Origin: Gekko japonicus
Taxonomy: Eukaryota
Length of the DNA stretch: 64,000 bases
NCBI RefSeq assembly: GCF_001447785.1
Contig: NW_015165235.1
Coordinates: 2,041,403-2,105,402 of the forward strand
Reading direction: 5' to 3'
The number at the start of each line of letters is the position of its first letter. The first letter of the stretch is position 1. Below are positions 2,084 through 59,900 of this stretch, in pieces. Both the position numbers and the translations under genes were made by a program. The notes under the pieces are model-generated. The model did not search any database. It saw only the letters and a program-made list of their open reading frames with translations, and was not told the origin of the DNA.

Positions 2084-2809
2084 ACATGGTGTGGCTTGTT
2101 CTGAATAGCAGTGCATTTTTAAAAAGTTGCTTTGGGTGGCAAGAAGGTTCACAAGGGAGATGGATTGCTTAAAGATACAGCAAAGGCTGTGCAAGCACAG
2201 CTTCAGCTGAAGCTTCATTTCATTCTTATTATGTTCACTTAATAGCAGTCTTACGTGCCTATGAAGCACACTTGAAGAATTTTCCATTATCTTCAATGAA
2301 GAAGGCAACTCTGGTGTGTCAAAAGGGCAGGTTGTTCCTTTCATTCAGCTGCATAAAGTGGTTCACTTGAGTATCAGCATCTTGCATACATTGGAACTCA
2401 TCAGAAGTTCTGATTTAAGGCATAAGTGTTTTGTGCTTACGTGCAAGTGCAGGCCAATACAGCTGGTGACTAAGGCAGACAATGCCCACCTTCAATATAT
2501 ATTGGTTTGCCTGATGTCTGACAATTCCCCTATTTGTTCAGGTAATAAAGGTAGTGAATCCTTGCTTGACCACATTTCTGTGAGTCACAAGACATCAGAT
2601 AGTGCTATAATGTCTTTTTTCTATTTTACGATTAATTTATAATAATTATAATAATAATAATAATATCTTTCGATGCTGGCTCTGAGCAATTTATTTATTT
2701 ATTTTACTTTTATCCCGCCCTCCCGCCGAAGCGGCTCAGGGCGGCTTACAACATTAAAACCAATAAAACAATAATTTACAGTTACACATATTCACAAGGG
2801 ACTAACACT

Positions 2810-3135
2810 AAGACGTGTTCCAGATGGCATTCACTCGGCTTGGCTTGATGACGTCAGTTTTTCCAGGACTGCTTCAAGTCGCAGCGTCACACTGCCACCG
2901 CCTGGCCGGATTGGCCCATTGCAGGCTTCTTAATGCCGAAGAGATCTTTCCAGGCTTCCGAGCTTCTGAGCTGGACACTCCATTTCGCAGGCTAACACCT
3001 CCCCCCACCGGGGGGGTTTAGTGTACCCACCCTCTCTAAGGAGTGGTACCCATTTTATCTACTCACCGAAGCTTTCGAACCGCTGGATGGACGGCGAGCT
3101 GGGGACAAGGCTGGTAGCTCATAGCAGCACGGGCT
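2810..3135 (-). mobile_element. Divergent Sauria SINE-like element
   Basis: gtggtaccc..tttatctact..gctttcgaac core resembles the Sauria SINE copy at 9229-9308; boundaries approximate. Confidence 0.55.
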
Positions 3136-3504
3136 AGAACTGACAGCAGTTTATCATTTTAATGTTAAAACTGAATTTGCTGCATAGGCACTGCAGTTCT
3201 TTAGTGCACATAAAATAAAATGGACAGGTTATTGGAAGTAAACTACGATAATTCTGAGATGAGCTTGGTTGTTTCCACTAAGAATCTGGTGGTGGTAGAT
3301 TTTTTTTCTTTTAATGTTCTCCTGATTTAGTTCAGTACTTTCTCTAGGAACATTTTCCTGTGCTTTATGAAAGATGCTGCTTCTTGCCAAAATATTTTAA
3401 TGTTTTAAACTAATATGCTATGGCCATTGACTAATGCAGTAAAGAGTGATAAACCGAACACTTTAGTATTTTTTGGTTGGGTTTTTTTTGGTATTTTTCA
3501 TATG

Positions 3505-11600: not shown

Positions 11601-14600
11601 TGTATTCTGCAACTGAAATCAAGATTGCCACCTCAGACTTCAGAACATTATTTATAAGGAAATCCCCAAGTGGTGCAGGATGCTGGTGCAAATTTGATTT
11701 CTGTATGTACGTGGTGTCATGGTTTGTTTAATATCTGACACATATTGCTCTTCTGTTTAACAGTCTGGAATATGATGAGAACTCTTCAATTATATTTAGG
11801 CCCAATGCAAAGGTAATTATAAACTGATGCTGACCCCTTTATTTTAATGCAATTTTAAAAATTCAGAGTATTCGCCACTCATTAAGAAATGCCTGAAACC
11901 TTGACATAAGTATCTAACTGGCTGTGTAGATGCCACTTAGCATAGCTGACAAACAGTAGAATGAATAAGTAATTGAGGAATTCTGTCTTTTGTGAAGTGG
12001 CAGTCTGCTTTTCAAACTCCATCGCTTCTTTCAACTTTAGGCAACTCCTGTTTTCAGAAAGAAGGTCATGTTTTCAGGCATCTGTCTGCCACTGTGAGGA
12101 CTAGAATCTTTAAAAAATGGAGCAAAGGCTCTTAAGACTGCCACAGATACAGGCCATTAGCACTAGTCTAATTCTGTAGATTGTCTTACAGTTTGGCATA
12201 GTGGTTAAGTGTGCGGACTCTAATCTGGGAGAACTGGGTTTGATTCGTTGGAGGCCCCTGTATTCTGCAACTGAAATCAAGATTGCCACCTCAGACTTCA
12301 GAACATTATTTATAAGGAAATCCCCAAGTGGTGCAGGATGCTGGTGCAAATTTGATTTCTGTATGTACGTGGTGTCATGGTTTGTTTAATATCTGACACA
12401 TATTGCTCTTCTGTTTAACAGCCTGGAATATGATGAGAACTCTTCAATTATATTTAGGCCCAATGCAAAGGTAATTATAAACTGATGCTGACCCCTTTAT
12501 TTTAATGCAATTTTAAAAATTCAGAGTATTCGCCACTCAATAAGAAATGCCTGAAACCTTGACATAAGTATCTGACTGGCTGTGTAGATGCCACTTAGCA
12601 TAGCTGACAAACAGTAGAATGAATAAGTAATTGAGGAATTCTGTCTTTTGTGAAGTGGCAGTCTGCTTTTCAAACTCCATCGCTTCTTTCAACTTTAGGC
12701 AACTCCTGTTTTCAGAAAGAAGGTCATGTTTTCAGGCATCTGTCTGCCACTGTGAGGACTAGAATCTTTAAAAAATGGAGCAAAGGCTCTTAAGACTGCC
12801 ACAGATACAGGCCATTAGCACTAGTCTAATTCTGTAGATTGTCTTACAGTTTGGCATAGTGGTTAAGTGTGCGGACTCTAATCTGGGAGAACTGAGTTTG
12901 ATTCCCCACTCCTCCACTTGCAGCTGCTGGATGACCTTGGGCAAGCCATAGTTCTGTCAGAGGTGTTCTTGAAAAGAGCAGTTTCTGTCAGAGCTCTCTC
13001 AGCCCCACCTACTTCACAGGGTGTCTGTTGTGGGGAGGGGAAGGGAAAGGAGATTGTAAGCTGCTCTGAGACTCCGAGTGAAGGGTGGGGTATAAACCCA
13101 ATCTCTTCTCTTCTTCCTCTTCATAAATACTGTGCTTTTTTTTTTTAGTAAAACTTTGTCTCAAAAACATTGCATACATTCCAAAAGAGAAAATATTTCA
13201 GAGGCTTTTTCTCCAGTGTCCCCAAATATCTACATTTCCTGTTGGGAAAATTGAAATCAGGGTGGGAGGAGAACTGGAAAAAAATGGCAGTGGTGGGCAG
13301 GGGGTTTCACATCTCTCTAATCATTGTCGTCCTCCTCATGCCATTTTTTAAAAAAAAACACTTTCCCCTCCTTTTTATTTTGATTAATTTACTGAGCCAT
13401 ACTTTTCTACATACCCAGTTGAGTCCCTTGAGTTGGTAAGAGAAATGTGTTTTGCCTGTGGGTGGCCGTGTTGTGCAGATCTGCTTATTCACACAGAAAC
13501 CACCTTGTTCAGGATTAGATAGAATGATTGTTGTTGAGTTAGTCAAGTAGGTGAGAGTTGATATTTTCCGGGTTATATTTTGAATTCTTCCCTTTTCTTT
13601 CAAAAACTAGGTTAACACAGACGGCTTAGTTCTAAGAGGCTGGTACAACTGCTTGACGCTGGCAATATACGGCTCTGTTGATAGAGTAGTAAGCCATGAT
13701 AGGGACTCCCCTCCGCCCCCTCCTCCGCCACCACCTCCTCCTCAACAACCAACAGCTTTGAAAAGGACCCCCAAACTTGGTGAGTGTGCCTAAAACGTTT
13801 TTTTAAAAGCCAAGTCATGAAAGTGATTTTTTAAATATCAGTTGTACCCCTTATACCTAAACATTGCCTTCCAGTACTATTACTTTTGAAGTGTTTGGTT
13901 GTGGCTGGTGAAGTTATCTCTGCATATGCCAAGAGTATTCCCCCCCCCCTAACAGTATCCATTCAGCTACTTCCCAGGTGAGTCCTGAAACACAATTTTA
14001 AATGACCATTCGTTGTAACATGTTTTGTGGTTTGGTGGGAAATCTATTAAAAGAGGATGGATGCATACATAGGAGGCAGTTTCTCTTTTACCAGATCTTG
14101 CAGCTGGGGATTGGTTCATGTATGCAGCCTGCAGTCCTAAACTACTTTTCCTGGAGTAAGCTCTATGGAATAAAAGGGGACTTACTTCTGAGTAGACATT
14201 CTTGGAATTGATTCTGCAGTAAGATAATAATAAGGTGGCAGAATGGATCATGCCACTTCAGCCTGTAGGTAATGGATTCCAGCTTTGGATGTCCTTTGAA
14301 CCGGACAACTCAGTGCAGAGAGGACATNNNNNNNNNNNNNNNNNNNNNNNNNNNNNNNNNNNNNNNNNNNNNNNNNNNNNCTTTTAAGGGAGTTCTTAAC
14401 ATAAGGGAGCATTTCAAAATGCGATCATTATCCTGTCATCTGAAGAGGCATACTGTGACTGGCAGGATGTTCCAAAGTGTGGGAACAGTTGCTGAAAATG
14501 AGCCTGCATGGGGCTGTATTTGAACCAACCTCCCAAACAGAGGAGACTGTCAGAAGTCAGGCGCCATAGTTGGTGCATGGGCTTATCTGTTGAAAGGCAG

Positions 14601-35600: not shown

Positions 35601-38600
35601 AAAGATCTGGTTCTGAGCACAGTTCGGAGTGCCAATCCTTTCCTTTCTCCCATTGAAGCTCCATGAGACAGTGCTCTTGAACAGCAGAAATGACTACAAC
35701 TTAAAGGGTGAAAGGACTGAAAAAAAAATTGCTATAGACCCAGTAATTTGGATTTTTTTAAAATCACAAAGTAAAAAATTCAGAGTGGCCAAAATTGAAA
35801 GTTCAGAATGACAAGGTAAAAAGGGGGTAAAATAATAATGATGAAGATGATGATAATACTTTTGATTTATTGATCGCTTTTTCCCACACACCTGTGGGCT
35901 CAGAGCGATTTACAGTTACTCATGACGTTTGGACTAACAATACTCATGGGGGATAGGGAAGATAACGTACAGTATTTTTAAATTACACACATTGTAGCTG
36001 GCCAGAGGATTCAACTGCGGGCTGGATCAGTCGTGTTCCGACGGCATGTATTCTGACAAAGCTTTGGCAGTTCAGATGTTATAGTTAAGCAGGGGAATTA
36101 TCCTCATAAAGCGGACGCTCGAGCAGAAAAGAGGTGTCTTCCTTTATTAACAATAAGCTCCTTTAACCAGAGGTTTTGAGCCATACAATGAAATCACAGT
36201 AAAATAATAAAAGGAAACAGTATGTCACTAATAAAATAACTTTGTGAGATTGTCAAGTTAAAACGTAGCAGGAGGGTCTCTCAAAGATATTATAATAGAC
36301 AAGAATTTGGCCACAGATCGCATACCTGCTGCAGGACTAGTATCAGCCAACAAAAAGGAAACTACCTGAGGTTTGATGCCAAGTTCGTACTTGCTCAGAA
36401 TGAGAGAGATCCAAAGTTCTTTGCAATGAAGACTATTGATAATAATATTGAAAAAGTGAGCAATGGTCTCAGTCGTGCCAGAGGCACAAGAACATAGGCA
36501 GCCAGATAATGAAATATTAGCAAACCGCCCCTTCCAATTTGTAGGCAGGGTTTTCAGTTTACTTAGCATAAATGCATGGTGGTTGCTACAAACACTGTTA
36601 TTCTAAGTATGGAGGAAGACTTGTGAGGGGAGAAGTTTCCAAGGGCTAGGGTGGGGAGTGTACATGGTGAGTCCGAAACTCCATTCTAATTCTGTTGAGT
36701 TTGATTGTCCTCTTTTTGATCTCTCTCAGTGCTTTGTATTTTGGATCATAGTAAGGGAAAGGACAAGACACTCCAATTTGCTGTCCGATGACTTCACCCA
36801 GGCACTTTTATGAGTATCTTCCCTCAGGAGACGTAAAAGACCTCCACAGGAGTTTGATACTAAAAGGGGAGTTTCAATCTCCGGCCCCGTTCACACGGAG
36901 CATTCGCTGCGCTAAAGGCACGATAGTCCGGCGGAGTTTCCGGGCACGATCACACCGGAACATCAGGGAGGCGTAGTGCACCCATGGCGTCCCGCCGAAG
37001 ATGCGCATTAAAAAAGTATCTGGGACGACCTACTGGCAAATGGTTTGCCACGGGCTGCATGCGGACTCCCTGGGTGTGATCGCACCGGCGCGTGGCTTTC
37101 TCCCTCTTTGTCCTCTTTGCCACGGGGAAGCTGCCGCCGCGTCTGATCGCATAATGGTGCATCAGAATGCGACGGCGCAAATAGCCGCGCTTCCCCCCGC
37201 GTTTTCTGGCACGTCTGACTGGGGCCTCAGATTAAAAGGACAAAGCCAAGCCCTAGATTCCAGTGGGTGTTGAGCAAACTCCATTCTTAGTGTAGTTCTT
37301 GCAACACGAGATGGTACTCCAGCGGAAAAGAGTCTTGCCTAAAGGGCATGATTCTTACCTGTAAGGCCTTAAATGATTTGGGGATGGATTCTTGAATGGC
37401 TGCCTCTTCCCATATTTCCCAGCCCTCCAGCTGAGATAATCTCAAACCCTGTGCTTTGTGGTTTCGCCTGCAGAGGTGAGGCAAGTGGCAACTAGAGAAA
37501 GCTTTTTTGGTGGTGATGCCTCTCCGGAATGCCCTCCTCGACCCTTGCCTGGTGCCTGCTTTCCTTTCCTTTAGGCACCAGGCCAAAACATTTCTCTTTA
37601 TCATTTCTAACGAACAGGTTCCATCTCTCTTTAGCTGTTTTATGGTCTGCTTTGATGAGTTTTTAAAAATCAATATTGTTACAGACTGTTCTGTTTTATA
37701 TGCTCTGGCTTGTCTTTATTGACTTGTTTTGATTTCTTTTATTGGCTTGGCTTGTTTTTGAGTGGCATAAATCTTTGCAATTGACTTATTTTTATTGTCA
37801 TGAGTGGTTTTGTTTCACTATTTTAGTCATAGGTTGCCTTGTACAGGTTTGGAGAGGTGGCATACAATCTTTGTACATAAACTTGTTTCCTGTACAGGTT
37901 GCACTGAGGAGCTGGAGAATGCAACAAAAATATGCTTACCACTAATCAAAACTGCATTTGGTATTACAGGACTGCATATATCTTGGCAGACGTCATGGAT
38001 GACCAGTTGAAGTCTATGTGGTTCTCACCATTCCAGGCTGAAGAGATTGAAACCGACCTAGACATGGTAAATTAGTTTGTTTACTTAATTTATACCCCAC
38101 CTTTCTCCCAATGGGAGCCCAAAACAGCTTATATGGTTCTCTGCTCCTCAATTTAATCCTCACAGCAGCTGTCTCAGGTAGGTTAGGTGGAAGATGTGTG
38201 ACTGGCCTGAGGTCACCCAGCAAGCTTCTAGGGCAGAGTGGGGATTCAAACCTGGGCCTCCAAAATTCTAGTCTGATACCACCACACAACACTGGCAGGA
38301 ATTTAATACTGAAGGGGGGGGGTTGAGTTGTCCATAGCATTTGTTAATATCATGAGCAACAAAAAATTATGCCATAAAGAGTTAGAGGGATACAACTGGT
38401 ACCTGATAGCAAAGGGCAAATAATAGTTTCACAGCGGAATCCAACCAGGCCGGCTCACCTGCTAGGTGAACTAGGCATTCGCCTAGAGCGTGGGCTGGCC
38501 CTTAGGGCACCAAATGCCCCCCGTCTGTGCCCTCCCCGCCCTCGGGACTGCCACCGGTGCCGGCTGCCGCTTTACCACGTGCTGTGGGGCCTGCTCGTTG

Positions 38601-41600
38601 AAGGCGCACAGCCAGGCTCGCTGCCAGTTCTTGCAGAAGGCGAAGAGCGCGGCCAGCAGGGCCCGGGCGCTGGGCGCCTCGCAGGGGGTGCCAGGCCCAG
38701 CCCAGGCACAGCATGGCTGTCCAGAGCCCCTGCACCGCCTCCCCCGGCTTTTAATCAATAAGTCAGAGAATTAGTCAGTTCATGTTAGTTCAAGTTCATT
38801 CAGGTGCATGCCGAGATTCTTCCATCATCATCTTCGTTTGCCCTTCTTGAGATTCTTGACTTTTTTCAGACATCAACCCCCCATCCCACCCTCCCACCAT
38901 GTCACAAACTTATCTGTTTACTAAAACATTTATGCCTGCCCTTCCTTCCTATGTTCAGGGTGGCTAACAATAAAAGGCTGAATTGGCCTTGAGTCTGAAT
39001 ATCCCACATCTAAGGAAAACCCTGATTCTGTGTAGAGGAAGTAACACATTACTTTTAAGCAATCAAAGTGTTCTCTGATCTAAAGGATTTATTTATTTTG
39101 CTTATTTAACTCACACAGCACTTAGCAGTGGATTTGTGGTAACATTTTTGTGGTTAATAATCTGTGTTGGAATGCTGGTCTAGTCAAGGCTACAAGACCT
39201 GAATGATTGACCTAGATTTGGGGTGTCAAACATGCGGCCCAGGGGCCGGATCACCCCCCCCCCCAAGGGCTTCTATCAGGCCTGCACTGGAACTGGCCAT
39301 CTCCTGCTTCCGGTTCTGCTGCTGCTGCATCATAGCTTGCTTTGCCAGACTCTCTTAATCACTCAGCCATTTCATGTTTCAACCTGGGTCCTAGACTCAG
39401 AACTCTGAGCAGGAGATTTCTGTGGTGAATGTCAATAAATCAAAAGTAGGTTTGCAGCTTACAGAGCTAATGTTTTAAGCATGTTTTTATTTTAAGTAAA
39501 AAAAATCTTTGTGTTTGTGTCCTTTATAAAGTTTATATCTCCACTACCTGGCATTACATCTTATGACACACATGGCCTGGCCCAACAAGGTCTCATTTAT
39601 GTCAGATCCAGCCCTCCTAACAAATGAGCTCGACACCCCTGGCCTAGATATTCCTTGAGGTTTTATACTCCTGCTACCTTTGAGTACCTGTAGCTCATTG
39701 TCTTCTAGACAACATAATGGGATCTTGGAAAGCAACTTCACATATTACATTGCAGTTAATGTATTTGCCAAGATATATTATGTGCAGCAGAGAGCCATGG
39801 CCAACACTGCCTCCTTTTGGTATGCTCGCCTATATATGTTTGAAAATGTTTGTTCTGTTTCTTGCACACATGACCTACATTTACAGGTTAAAAATGCAAA
39901 ATGTGAAGCGCAGTTAAGAGGCTGAAAGGGCTGGTCTATATTAGTCATGTTAATTGTTGCTTCCTCAGAGCCAGTTTGGTATAGTGGCTAAGAGTGGTGG
40001 AATCTAATCTGGAGAACTGGGTTTGATTCCCCACCTTCTTGAGATTCTTGACTTTTTTCAGACATCAACCCCCCATCCCACCCTCCCACCATGTCACAAA
40101 CTTATCTGTTTACTAAAACATTTATGCCTGCCCTTCCTTCCTATGTTCAGGGTGGCTAACAATAAAAGGCTGAATTGGCCTTGAGTCTGAATATCCCACA
40201 TCTAAGGAAAACCCTGATTCTGTGTAGAGGAAGTAACACATTACTTTTAAGCAATCAAAGTGTTCTCTGATCTAAAGGATTTATTTATTTTGCTTATTTA
40301 ACTCACACAGCACTTAGCAGTGGATTTGTGGTAACATTTTTGTGGTTAATAATCTGTGTTGGAATGCTGGTCTAGTCAAGGCTACAAGACCTGAATGATT
40401 GACCTAGATTTGGGGTGTCAAACATGCGGCCCAGGGGCCGGATCCCCCCCCCCCCCCCAAGGGCTTCTATCAGGCCTGCACTGGAACTGGCCATCTCCTG
40501 CTTCCGGTTCTGCTGCTGCTGCATCATAGCTTGCTTTGCCAGACTCTCTTAATCACTCAGCCATTTCATGTTTCAACCTGGGTCCTAGACTCAGAACTCT
40601 GAGCAGGAGATTTCTGTGGTGAATGTCAATAAATCAAAAGTAGGTTTGCAGCTTACAGAGCTAATGTTTTAAGCATGTTTTTATTTTAAGTAAAAAAAAT
40701 CTTTGTGTTTGTGTCCTTTATAAAGTTTATATCTCCACTACCTGGCATTACATCTTATGACACACATGCAAATGAGGTTGCACCATTGATTTATACAGTG
40801 ACATTATGATACTGGCTGATTTGTTTTCAATTCCCTTCCTAATAATCCCCAGCATAGCGTTGGCCTTTTTTATTGCAGTCACACATTGTCTCGGCATTTT
40901 CAGTGGGTTATCTACTACGACTCCAAGATCTCTCTCTTGGTCAGTCTCCACCAGTTCAGCCCCATTAACGTGTATTTGTAGTTAGTATTTTTGGCCCCAG
41001 TGTGCATCACTTTGCACTTGGCCACACTGAACCCCATTTGCCACGTTGACGCTCACTTGCCCATCCTCGACAGATTCCTTTGGAGTGCCTCACAATCCTC
41101 CCTGGTTGTCACCACCTTGAACAACTTTGTGTCATCTGCAAGTTTAGCCACTTCACTGTTTACTCCCAACTCCAAATCATAAATAAACAAAAAAGCATTG
41201 GACCCAGTACTGAGCCCTGTGGTACCCCACTGCTTACCACCCTCCACTGTGAAAATTGCCCATTTATACTCTCTGTTTCCTGTTAATTAGCCATTTTTTG
41301 ATCCACAAGAGGACCTGTCCTTTTATCCCATGACTATTGAGCTTACTTAGGAGCCTTTGATGAACTTTTATCAAAAGCTTTCTGGACATCAAGGTAAACA
41401 ACATCTATTGGGTTCCCCTTGTCCACATGTTTGTTCACCCCCTCAAAGAACACTAATCAACTCTTCTTCTACTACTACTACTATGAACCGATAAGGAAGG
41501 CAGAGACAGTAGCTTCTTCACTGAAACAAATTAATTGGTTTATTGAAGCACAGGAATAAAAGAGAGAATAAAAATAGAATATTAGATGAGAATGACAAGA

Positions 41601-59219: not shown

Positions 59220-59900
59220 AACCCACAATCTCCGATGCCAGCCCAGCTCGACCACCTACAGCCGCCTCCTCTGTCCCAGGGCCAGGTCTTCGCCTCCCCT
59301 CTTACTTCAAGAGACCCCGCGCGACATCAATCTCTCCATCAGGGAGGGGCGCACTTTCCTCCCCTGCCGCCAGGAGGAGAAGAAAATGGCTGATAGCGAA
59401 GCCCTCCTCTAACCACAGAGCGCCACCCCCTCCTTCTCCCGTTCGGTTGCCATGCAGCTTCGTTAAGTGCTGTAAATAGCACGTAGCCCGGACAACGGGA
59501 AGAAGAAGATACCATTTTGCGACACACATCGGCCATGTTGAGCGGTGGGGGAATTGCGTGTCGGGCATGCGCAATAGCGAACTTGCTCGCGCCTACTTTT
59601 AAGAGCGGTGACAGGAGGATGTAGAGGGAAGGGTTTTAAAAAAAGGACCAAAGCAGTACGCTTGGATCATTGAGCATGCGCAGTAAATTGGACGGTCACT
59701 GGGAAAGAGGATTGGCCTACCGGCAAGTGTTGACATCGACTGCGCATGGGCAGTTGGGTTAGGATTCGATGGCGCAGCCGTAGCCTCCGTGTGGCGGGAC
59801 CGTTGAATTGGAATGTGAGTGCGGTTGGGTAGCCAGGGACCGGGACGAATTGAGGGCGGTAGTGGAGACTGCTAGTGGGCATTTTTACGGATCAAAGAGA
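59220..59900. promoter_or_regulatory. CpG-rich bidirectional promoter (RING gene / RAD54B) with putative non-coding first exons
   Basis: CpG-dense island between divergent genes. NRF1-like GCATGCGCA at 59565 and 59674, TGCGCATG at 59741; ATTGG (CCAAT box) at 59711; YY1-like CCATTTT at 59512. Outward-facing donors: - strand GAA|gtaaga at 59305, + strand AAT|gtgagt at 59815. Confidence 0.75.

What the first reader, a model, noticed from the sequence alone, without database searches (positions are those of the whole stretch)
38446..38749. Foreign gene fragment (C2CD2L/TMEM24 exon 1-intron 1 junction) behind a hAT-like transposon end in VIRMA intron 20
Seen: an isolated GC/CpG-rich 300-bp island in an AT-rich intron. 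On the - strand it reads [35 protein letters not shown] (38680-38576), then a donor-like gtaaag at 38575 and GC-rich non-coding sequence. One frameshift upstream it reads [10 protein letters not shown]. Knowledge (from memory): human C2CD2L has GVWRSLLRLR...[38 protein letters not shown], at the start of the SMP domain. The differences look like neutral decay: two R>C changes (CGC>TGC, CpG deamination), a 3-codon deletion between two Phe codons, and a frameshift. Homology stops at a splice donor instead of continuing into SSIQI, so the source was genomic DNA and not spliced mRNA. Inference: the adjoining CAGGCCGGC...TAGG...CGCCTAG end at 38446 belongs to a non-autonomous hAT that captured and moved a piece of a host gene's CpG island. 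Such Pack-type capture is well known in plants (Pack-MULEs) and poorly documented in amniotes. No right TIR or TSD was found.
Basis: partly seen in the sequence, partly recalled or inferred. Interest (0 to 1): 0.8.

Follow-up and report, generated by a model that had tools for sequence, protein, structure and literature searches.

The report
Dead C2CD2L fragment in dispersed repeat
A 300-base GC-rich patch in an intron of a gecko's VIRMA gene is a decayed piece of another gene (C2CD2L/TMEM24, end of exon 1 plus the start of intron 1) that sits beside a very abundant repeat end, exists in several other copies in the same genome and is missing at this spot in a related species, so it most likely travelled as transposon cargo and does nothing now.

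Summary
38446-38749 is a GC/CpG island (GC 0.71, CpG o/e 0.58; flanks about 0.1). Its minus strand encodes, in two frames, about 60 residues of C2CD2L exon 1, ending at the exon's end before a GT. The only solved-structure hit is TMEM24 (E 5e-7), and gecko orthologues are the closest.

Public contigs laid on the region add four things:
- 38446-38514 is a very high-copy repeat in this species and in a related one.
- The gene-like part is present in about 8-13 copy-equivalents (4-7 distinct contigs). Some span the same repeat/fragment junction, and two share the window's indels.
- 38750-38841 is a third repeat, at about 40-60x.
- By contig-length arithmetic, the related species has an empty site lacking the whole 396-bp unit 38446-38841.

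This points to a composite, amplified, lineage-specific insertion, that is, Pack-type transduplication. The hAT label is not supported: I found no partner TIR, no 8-bp TSD and no YARNG start. Canonical Helitron ends fail as well. There is no sign of function.

Such capture is already catalogued in animals (Tan et al. 2021), although multicopy cases are rare. The one that was followed up (GLUD1) was read as a one-off repair patch.

The parts
38446..38841 (-). Whole inserted composite unit (396 bp), antisense to VIRMA. It consists of a repeat end, a linker, the C2CD2L fragment and a second repeat.
   Evidence: Summed contig depth changes at 38446 and about 38844. An X1 contig starts at 38812, 30 letters before 38842. 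An organism B contig of 833 letters (depth 8.1) accounts for both flanks with no room for the unit: 212 letters = 86 + about 125 (inference from lengths).
38446..38514 (.). It reads CAGGCCGGCTCACC..., with three CTAGG motifs and two short palindromes.
   Evidence: Summed contig depth is about 400,000 (X1), 280,000 (X2) and 24,000 (organism B), against 52-62 for single-copy contigs of X1. RNA reads also fall on it. There is no second copy or inverted partner in the window. The fold is not significant, z -1.4.
38515..38528 (.). Short linker between the repeat end and the gene-derived part. Other copies carry indels here.
   Evidence: Other copies carry insertions at 38515/38516 and an 8-bp deletion at 38523. 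Total depth is 440-850 in X1.
38529..38575 (-). GC-rich non-coding stretch after the exon-1 end, starting with a GT. It is presumed to be the start of C2CD2L intron 1.
   Evidence: No exon-2 (SSIQITFE) sequence follows. Sister copies align without gaps to 38529. Similarity to the intron read-through of P0001 is only weak.
38576..38704 (-). C2CD2L exon-1 piece, frame 1: [23 protein letters not shown][-RAF][20 protein letters not shown].
   Evidence: The best match is P0001 (28/45). LLAALFAF occurs only in geckos and P0001.
38688..38750 (-). C2CD2L exon-1 piece, other frame: [21 protein letters not shown]. The frameshift lies at about 38690-38700.
   Evidence: the best match is Euleptes europaea, GLWTALLRLGWARH (14/23); the tblastn frame -3 match reaches the island edge at 38750.
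38750..38841 (.). AT-rich right part of the unit. It is a moderately repeated sequence specific to organism A.
   Evidence: Summed depth is 2,100-3,500 in X1/X2 (about 40-60 times single copy). Seven contigs share A at 38803. Depth is 0 in organism B.

Best explanation
The island is a dead, non-functional copy of about 220 bp of genomic C2CD2L DNA: the last two thirds of exon 1 after the membrane helix, the splice donor and the first tens of bases of intron 1. The piece was built into a composite repeat next to the end of a very abundant DNA-transposon-like family (transduplication, 'Pack'-type). The capture happened elsewhere and earlier. The captured piece acquired a 9-nt deletion and a frameshift, and the composite then spread to roughly ten places in this gecko lineage. 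One copy, the 396-bp unit 38446-38841, landed antisense in a VIRMA intron, 380 bp downstream of an exon, after the split from the related organism B. It has since lost CpGs.

Shown: the gene identity, the multiple copies, the shared junction and indels, and the repeat status of both flanking parts.
Inferred: the empty site in organism B, the mode of spread (transposition) and the order of events.
Not resolved: the superfamily of the carrier.
For: Identity.

Not from spliced mRNA: the alignments stop at the exon-1 end, a GT follows, and no exon-2 match appears.

Repeat context and copy number:
- 38460-38514 has a summed depth of about 4e5, against 52-62 for single-copy contigs.
- 38515-38734 has 550-740 in X1 and 180-230 in X2, with 4-7 distinct contigs at the variant sites.
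- X2 contig 17 spans 38471-38631 (repeat end plus fragment) at about 86% identity.
- Two more X1 contigs cross 38515/38516 with indels.
- Contigs 1 and 18 align to 38529-38745 with 0 gaps. They therefore share the 9-nt deletion and the frameshift, which must predate the spread.

Decay: the majority letters of the other copies restore the orthologue states W>R, T>A, C>R and F>L. Five of the six changes are transitions and 3 restore a CpG. CpG o/e is 0.58.

Lineage-specific insertion: the length arithmetic of the organism B contig.

Independent support for the locus: exact 146-bp contigs in X1 and X2, and an X1 contig across 38841|38842.

Precedent: Tan et al. 2021 report that multicopy Pack-TIRs favour GC-rich cargo.
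Against: There is no inverted partner of the 38446 end, no target-site duplication (AATCCAAC against CTTCTTGA) and no recognisable transposon terminus at 38841.

The three parts of the unit differ about 100-fold in abundance.

Two 84% sister copies carry unlike sequence on both sides of 38529-38745, so the module also occurs in other contexts.

Summed contig depth is, by the tool's own warning, not a copy number.

The empty site is inferred from lengths and equal depths, not read from a listed joint.

Depth alone cannot show that 38446, rather than 38514, is the outer end of the abundant repeat.
Confidence: 0.55

Rival explanations
1. One-off repair patch. A double-strand break in the VIRMA intron was mended by copying 396 bp from an existing composite or pseudogene locus (template switching or gap filling), without any transposition. 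The other copies arose likewise or by segmental duplication.
For: No TSD or TIR. The neighbourhood shows another templated-looking rearrangement, duplicate 38842-39574 = 40034-40768, which starts exactly at the unit's edge. Tan et al. find that most animal Pack-TIRs are single gap-filling events. The scan's GLUD1 follow-up in this genome reached the same reading (untested here).
Against: Several diverged copies share the repeat/fragment junction and the same indels. Repeated independent patches copying the same composite are unlikely. Both parts flanking the fragment are themselves repeats.
Confidence: 0.25
2. Not cargo. The abundant repeat was simply inserted in intron 1 of C2CD2L (or of a duplicated pseudogene of it), and a stretch spanning exon 1, intron and repeat was later duplicated to this and other places.
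For: Depth cannot tell which side of 38446-38514 is the repeat's true terminus. Sister copies with other flanks exist (contigs 1, 18 and 21).
Against: The CAGG... start faces away from the fragment, as an outer terminus would. The intron read-through of the closest orthologue-like contig, P0001, shows nothing like the repeat in its 119 codons. This reading also leaves the third repeat, 38750-38841, on the other side unexplained.
Confidence: 0.1
3. Retro-origin. Reverse transcriptase switched template from the 3' end of a LINE or SINE (38446-38514 on the minus strand) to unspliced C2CD2L pre-mRNA, giving a chimeric retrocopy.
For: The fragment and the abundant segment are co-linear, with the abundant part at the 3' side on the minus strand. 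The fragment starts mid-exon, like a 5' truncation.
Against: There is no poly-A or microsatellite tail and no TSD. Abundance does not fall steadily toward the 5' side: 38750-38841 is more abundant than the fragment. No Rfam or SINE-type RNA match was found.
Confidence: 0.06
4. Assembly or contamination artefact.
For: The nearby, essentially identical 735-bp duplicate may be an assembly artefact.
Against: Exact contigs of the island occur in two other runs of the same species, and an X1 contig crosses the unit's right junction.
Confidence: 0.02

Closest known systems
Pack-TIRs of animals (Tan et al. 2021, Nat Commun 12:4280, PMC8277862). The multicopy cases include Pack-hAT-N8_XT with the CAPSL 5'UTR in Xenopus tropicalis and one case in the American alligator.
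   Same: A short GC-rich 5' gene piece next to DNA-transposon sequence, present in several dispersed copies, absent at the orthologous site of an outgroup, and non-coding.
   Different: Those cases have both TIRs and distinct TSDs. Here only one transposon-like end is seen, no TSD is present, and the superfamily is unknown.
Pack-MULEs of rice and other plants (PMC5861414)
   Same: Capture of genomic (intron-containing) gene fragments, with a preference for GC-rich 5' ends, followed by amplification.
   Different: A different superfamily (Mutator, with long TIRs and 9-bp TSDs), thousands of elements, and often expressed.
Helitron gene capture, e.g. HelibatN3 carrying the NUBPL promoter and first exon in Myotis (PMC2997563, PMC4224331)
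   Same: No TIR and no TSD, a first-exon cargo, short palindromes 9-26 nt from one end, and a terminal part far more abundant than the interior.
   Different: The 5' TC is absent, the A|T target is not seen, and CTRR fits only if one flank base is counted. Copy number is about 10, not above 1000.
Turmoil-1 transduplication in C. elegans (PMC2572040)
   Same: An animal DNA transposon with incorporated pieces of host coding sequence.
   Different: In Turmoil-1 the captured pieces lie within long inverted terminal repeats.

Membership tests
C2CD2L (TMEM24) gene-derived sequence | Significant, specific protein similarity to C2CD2L exon 1 at the start of the SMP domain | tested here: met
   PDB 5TOD is the only hit, E 4.6e-7. 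Among 1.84 billion representatives, the hits are C2CD2L-type apart from one repetitive protein. The alignment to 14 orthologues puts geckos closest.
C2CD2L (TMEM24) gene-derived sequence | Nucleotide identity to the species' own gene running into intron 1 | not testable with these tools
The protein-level intron similarity to P0001 is weak.
hAT superfamily element | 8-bp target-site duplication | tested here: not met
   The flanks are AATCCAAC (38438-38445) and CTTCTTGA (38842-38849). They share no 5-mer within 20 bp of either edge (read).
hAT superfamily element | Terminal inverted repeats | tested here: not met
   There is no inverted match of the 38446 end anywhere in the 64-kb window.
hAT superfamily element | Terminal YARNG motif | tested here: not met
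   The end reads CAGGC, with C rather than G as the fifth base. For contrast, the real hAT-type MITE at 39219-39642 has ...CAGGGGTGTC at its right end and an 8-bp TSD.
Pack-TIR / transduplication | Host gene fragment inside transposon sequence, with the composite present at more than one locus | tested here: inconclusive
   Other diverged contigs span the same repeat/fragment junction, and sister copies share the indels. However, only one transposon-like end is seen, and the flanks of the other copies could not be read.
Pack-TIR / transduplication | Empty orthologous site in an outgroup | tested here: inconclusive
   The organism B contig (833 letters, depth 8.1) fits an empty site by length arithmetic. 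The joint itself was not among the rows shown.
Helitron | 5' TC and 3' CTRR termini, inserted between A and T | tested here: not met
   On the minus strand the unit begins GGCAAACG after a G. The 3' end is CCTG|G, which gives CTGG+T only if 38445 is counted as part of the unit. The definition is taken from PMC2997563.
Helitron | [quoted passage not shown] | tested here: inconclusive
   TCACCTAGCAGGTGA lies 9 nt from the end and CTAGGCGAATGCCTAG lies 26 nt from it. The fold is no better than shuffles, z -1.4.

The most novel reading that the evidence does not exclude
This gecko lineage hosts a DNA-transposon family, still unclassified and lacking TIRs and TSDs, that repeatedly picks up CpG-island first exons and spreads them. 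That would be a Pack-MULE- or Helibat-like habit in a squamate.
Probability: 0.2. Interest if true: 0.7.

Novelty: new member of a known kind. Interest (0 to 1): 0.4.

Why it matters
On its own this is a neutral relic with no sign of function. Its value is as a worked case. Multicopy gene-fragment capture by DNA transposons is rare in vertebrates: Tan et al. 2021 found 4 multicopy cases among 370 animal Pack-TIRs, and only one in an amniote. A squamate case with a GC-rich first-exon cargo adds to the hint that capture favours open, GC-rich promoter-proximal DNA.

If the many similar notes from this genome belong to one carrier family, geckos could become a vertebrate model for how such capture works.

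For annotation, such islands can be mistaken for orphan promoters or hidden exons.

Tried and rejected
- Pfam scan of the three minus-strand ORFs: nothing.
- Word-index protein search with the 91-aa ORF: nothing in its length range.
- Rfam scan of 37000-41500: only a chance-level scaRNA match elsewhere. A passing likeness of the repeat end to 5S rRNA was dropped for that reason.
- Search for a partner TIR or other copies of the repeat end in the window: none.
- Exact 28-mer of the repeat end in metagenome contigs: none.
- DNA fold of the terminus: not significant.
- Intron read-through similarity to P0001 and P0002: not significant.
- I first took the 84% contigs (records 1 and 18) for the working source gene and rejected that. 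They align without gaps, so they share the 9-nt deletion and the frameshift.
- Depth steps as proof of true family termini: rejected, because alignments are clipped wherever the window stops matching.
- RNA: no reads on the island, but none on the single-copy intron either, with only 3% of the run read. This is uninformative.
- The two reading frames were searched and aligned as separate pieces.
I left the conserved VIRMA exon out of the laid stretch on purpose.
Full report
**1. What is in the sequence**

38446-38749 stands out from an AT-rich intron. GC is 0.72 in 38500-38699, against 0.36-0.46 around it. The stretch holds 22 CpG in 304 bp (o/e 0.58), against 0.09 and 0.12 in the flanks and 0.25 for the window.

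GTAAAG follows it, and another frame upstream holds [10 protein letters not shown].

The host gene is VIRMA on the plus strand. 37971-38066 matches residues 1516-1547 of 'Protein virilizer homolog', PDB 7VF2, at E 9e-14. The island lies about 380 bp into the following intron, antisense to VIRMA. I did not check the intron number.

**2. Identity of the fragment**

- The 91-aa minus-strand ORF has one hit among all solved structures: TMEM24 (= C2CD2L) SMP domain, 5TOD, E 4.6e-7.
- Pfam and the word-index search were blank.
- The search of 1.84 billion representatives gave four hits:
  - two unnamed Logan-contig ORFs that read exon 1 on into the intron (P0001 at 3.5e-7, P0002 at 4.3e-6);
  - Pseudonaja textilis 'C2CD2 like' (P0004, 3.5e-4);
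  - one repetitive protein (P0003), which I take for a composition match.
- With a snake orthologue as query I fetched 48 named C2CD2L proteins, including the geckos Sphaerodactylus townsendi and Euleptes europaea.
- I aligned the window's two frames separately. [21 protein letters not shown] is closest to Euleptes (GLWTALLRLGWARH, 14/23). WAGPG...NEQAPQHV is closest to P0001 (28/45). LLAALFAF, with A rather than S, occurs only in the geckos and P0001.
- The fragment therefore starts after the membrane helix (about residue 46 of P0001) and ends exactly where all orthologues pass to exon 2 (SS[IV]QI). No exon-2 match follows in any frame.

The source was unspliced sequence, most simply genomic DNA. 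Similarity of the next 25 codons to the intron read-through of P0001 is only suggestive (281 of 5000 shuffles score as well).

Against every orthologue the window lacks the RAF codons, has R>C, R>W and R>Q type changes, and has its two conserved blocks in different frames. It is a dead fragment.

**3. What public reads add**

I laid contigs of two DNA runs of the same species (X1, X2), contigs of one DNA run of a related species (X15, organism B) and raw reads of one RNA run on 38075-39700 at 80% likeness. Single-copy contigs of X1 have depth 52-62.

| Stretch | Summed depth | Note |
|---|---|---|
| 38460-38514 | about 400,000 (X1), 280,000 (X2), 24,000 (X15) | a very abundant repeat, shared by both species |
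| 38515-38734 | 550-740 (X1), 180-230 (X2) | 4-7 distinct contigs at variant sites |
| 38735-38844 | 2,100-3,500 (X1, X2), 0 (X15) | depth falls to 62 from 38845 |

The tool warns that summed depth is not a copy number. I therefore rely mainly on the distinct contigs:

- Exact 146-bp contigs of the island occur in X1 and X2.
- A 158-letter X2 contig spans 38471-38631, that is the repeat end plus the fragment. It is about 86% identical and has an 8-bp deletion at 38523.
- Two X1 contigs cross 38515/38516 with small insertions.
- Contigs of 250 and 392 letters align to 38529-38745 at 84% with no gaps, then run on unlike on both sides.

The zero gaps mean that the last two contigs share the 9-nt deletion and the frameshift. 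They are sister pseudo-copies, not the working gene, and those indels predate the spread.

At six sites most other copies differ from the window. Their letters give R, R, A, R and L where the window has W, H, T, C and F. Four of these (R for W, A, R, L) are orthologue states. Five of the six changes are transitions and three restore a CpG. That amounts to about 3% private decay of this copy.

**4. The unit and its age**

An X1 contig begins at 38812 and runs unbranched through 38841|38842. With 31-letter words, that places the end of the shared repeat at 38841.

In organism B, one contig of 833 letters and depth 8.1 aligns to 39207-38928. The same depth value recurs on 38323-38445, on 38955-39174 and on 39670-39700. 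The 212 contig letters left of 38928 equal 86 (38842-38927) plus about 125 (38323-38445).

I infer that organism B has an empty site, with neither the 396-bp unit 38446-38841 nor the MITE at 39219-39642. The joint itself was not among the rows printed, so this is an inference and not a reading. The flanks differ by about 5% between the two species, which makes the insertion younger than their split.

**5. Which mobile element?**

The hAT tests fail:
- There is no inverted partner of CAGGCCGGCTCACC... in 64 kb.
- The flanks AATCCAAC and CTTCTTGA share nothing.
- CAGGC is not YARNG.

For contrast, the neighbouring element 39219-39642 is a proper hAT-type MITE. It has the 8-bp TSD CCTAGATT/CCTAGATA...CAGGGGTGTC at its right end, and loose ends of low agreement at both termini.

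A Helitron would explain the missing TIR and TSD, the cargo, and the two short palindromes 9 and 26 nt from the 38446 end. But the 5' TC and the A|T target are absent, CTRR fits only if base 38445 is counted, and the fold is no better than shuffles.

The three parts of the unit differ about 100-fold in abundance, and the module also occurs in other contexts. The family is therefore a mosaic, and I leave the superfamily open.

**6. Reading**

The most likely history (0.55) is this. A C2CD2L exon-1/intron-1 piece was copied into transposon sequence elsewhere, suffered indels, spread as a composite to about ten places, and one copy landed here.

The main rival (0.25) is a transposition-free repair patch copied from such a composite. 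The other rivals are:
- a repeat that merely sat in the source intron (0.10);
- a template-switch retrocopy (0.06);
- an artefact (0.02).

Nothing suggests function. No RNA read lies on the island, but the surrounding intron is equally bare and only 3% of the run was read.

**7. Known or new**

Capture of gene pieces by DNA transposons is catalogued in animals. Tan et al. 2021 list 370 Pack-TIRs, 208 of them hAT. Only four are multicopy (three in Xenopus, one in alligator), and the multicopy ones favour GC-rich cargo. Helibat carries a first exon at more than 1000 copies. This case is a new member of that kind, of modest interest.

These are untested leads. The only one followed up (GLUD1) was read as a one-off repair patch.

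**8. Limits**

- The two frames were never joined.

Noticed in passing
window 38842-39574 and 40034-40768: A 735-bp direct duplicate, identical except in a poly-C tract. The second copy starts exactly at the right edge of the C2CD2L unit. It follows a SINE head cut at 40033 and ends in the middle of a MITE at 40768. In run X1 the first copy has single-copy depth, and its contig crosses 38841|38842 unbranched. The duplicate is therefore either very recent, polymorphic or an assembly artefact. I cannot explain why its breakpoint coincides with the unit's edge.
   Followed up: partly
window 39219-39642: A hAT-type MITE with the 8-bp TSD CCTAGATT/CCTAGATA and ends (T)GGGGTGTCAAAC...GCTCGACACCCCTGG. 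It belongs to a very high-copy family (summed depth 1-7 million) and is apparently absent at this site in organism B. Many family members carry a deletion of about 112-118 bp between 39327-39333 and 39445-39447.
   Followed up: partly
window 36850-37220: A second CpG-rich block (GC 0.55-0.60, CpG o/e about 1.0) 1.2 kb upstream, in the preceding VIRMA intron. It contains internal ...GATCGCAC/CACCGG... repeats and no long ORF of note. Its nature is unknown. A similar block lies at about 59300-59850.
   Followed up: no
window 38080-38300: A tRNA-type SINE on the minus strand directly after the VIRMA exon's donor. It is very high copy in both species and in RNA.
   Followed up: no
window 12167-12246 and 12825-12909: Two copies of the same SINE head with the same 22-bp left flank, 658 bp apart. 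One is cut after GATTC. This is another local duplication of the kind seen at 38842/40034.
   Followed up: no
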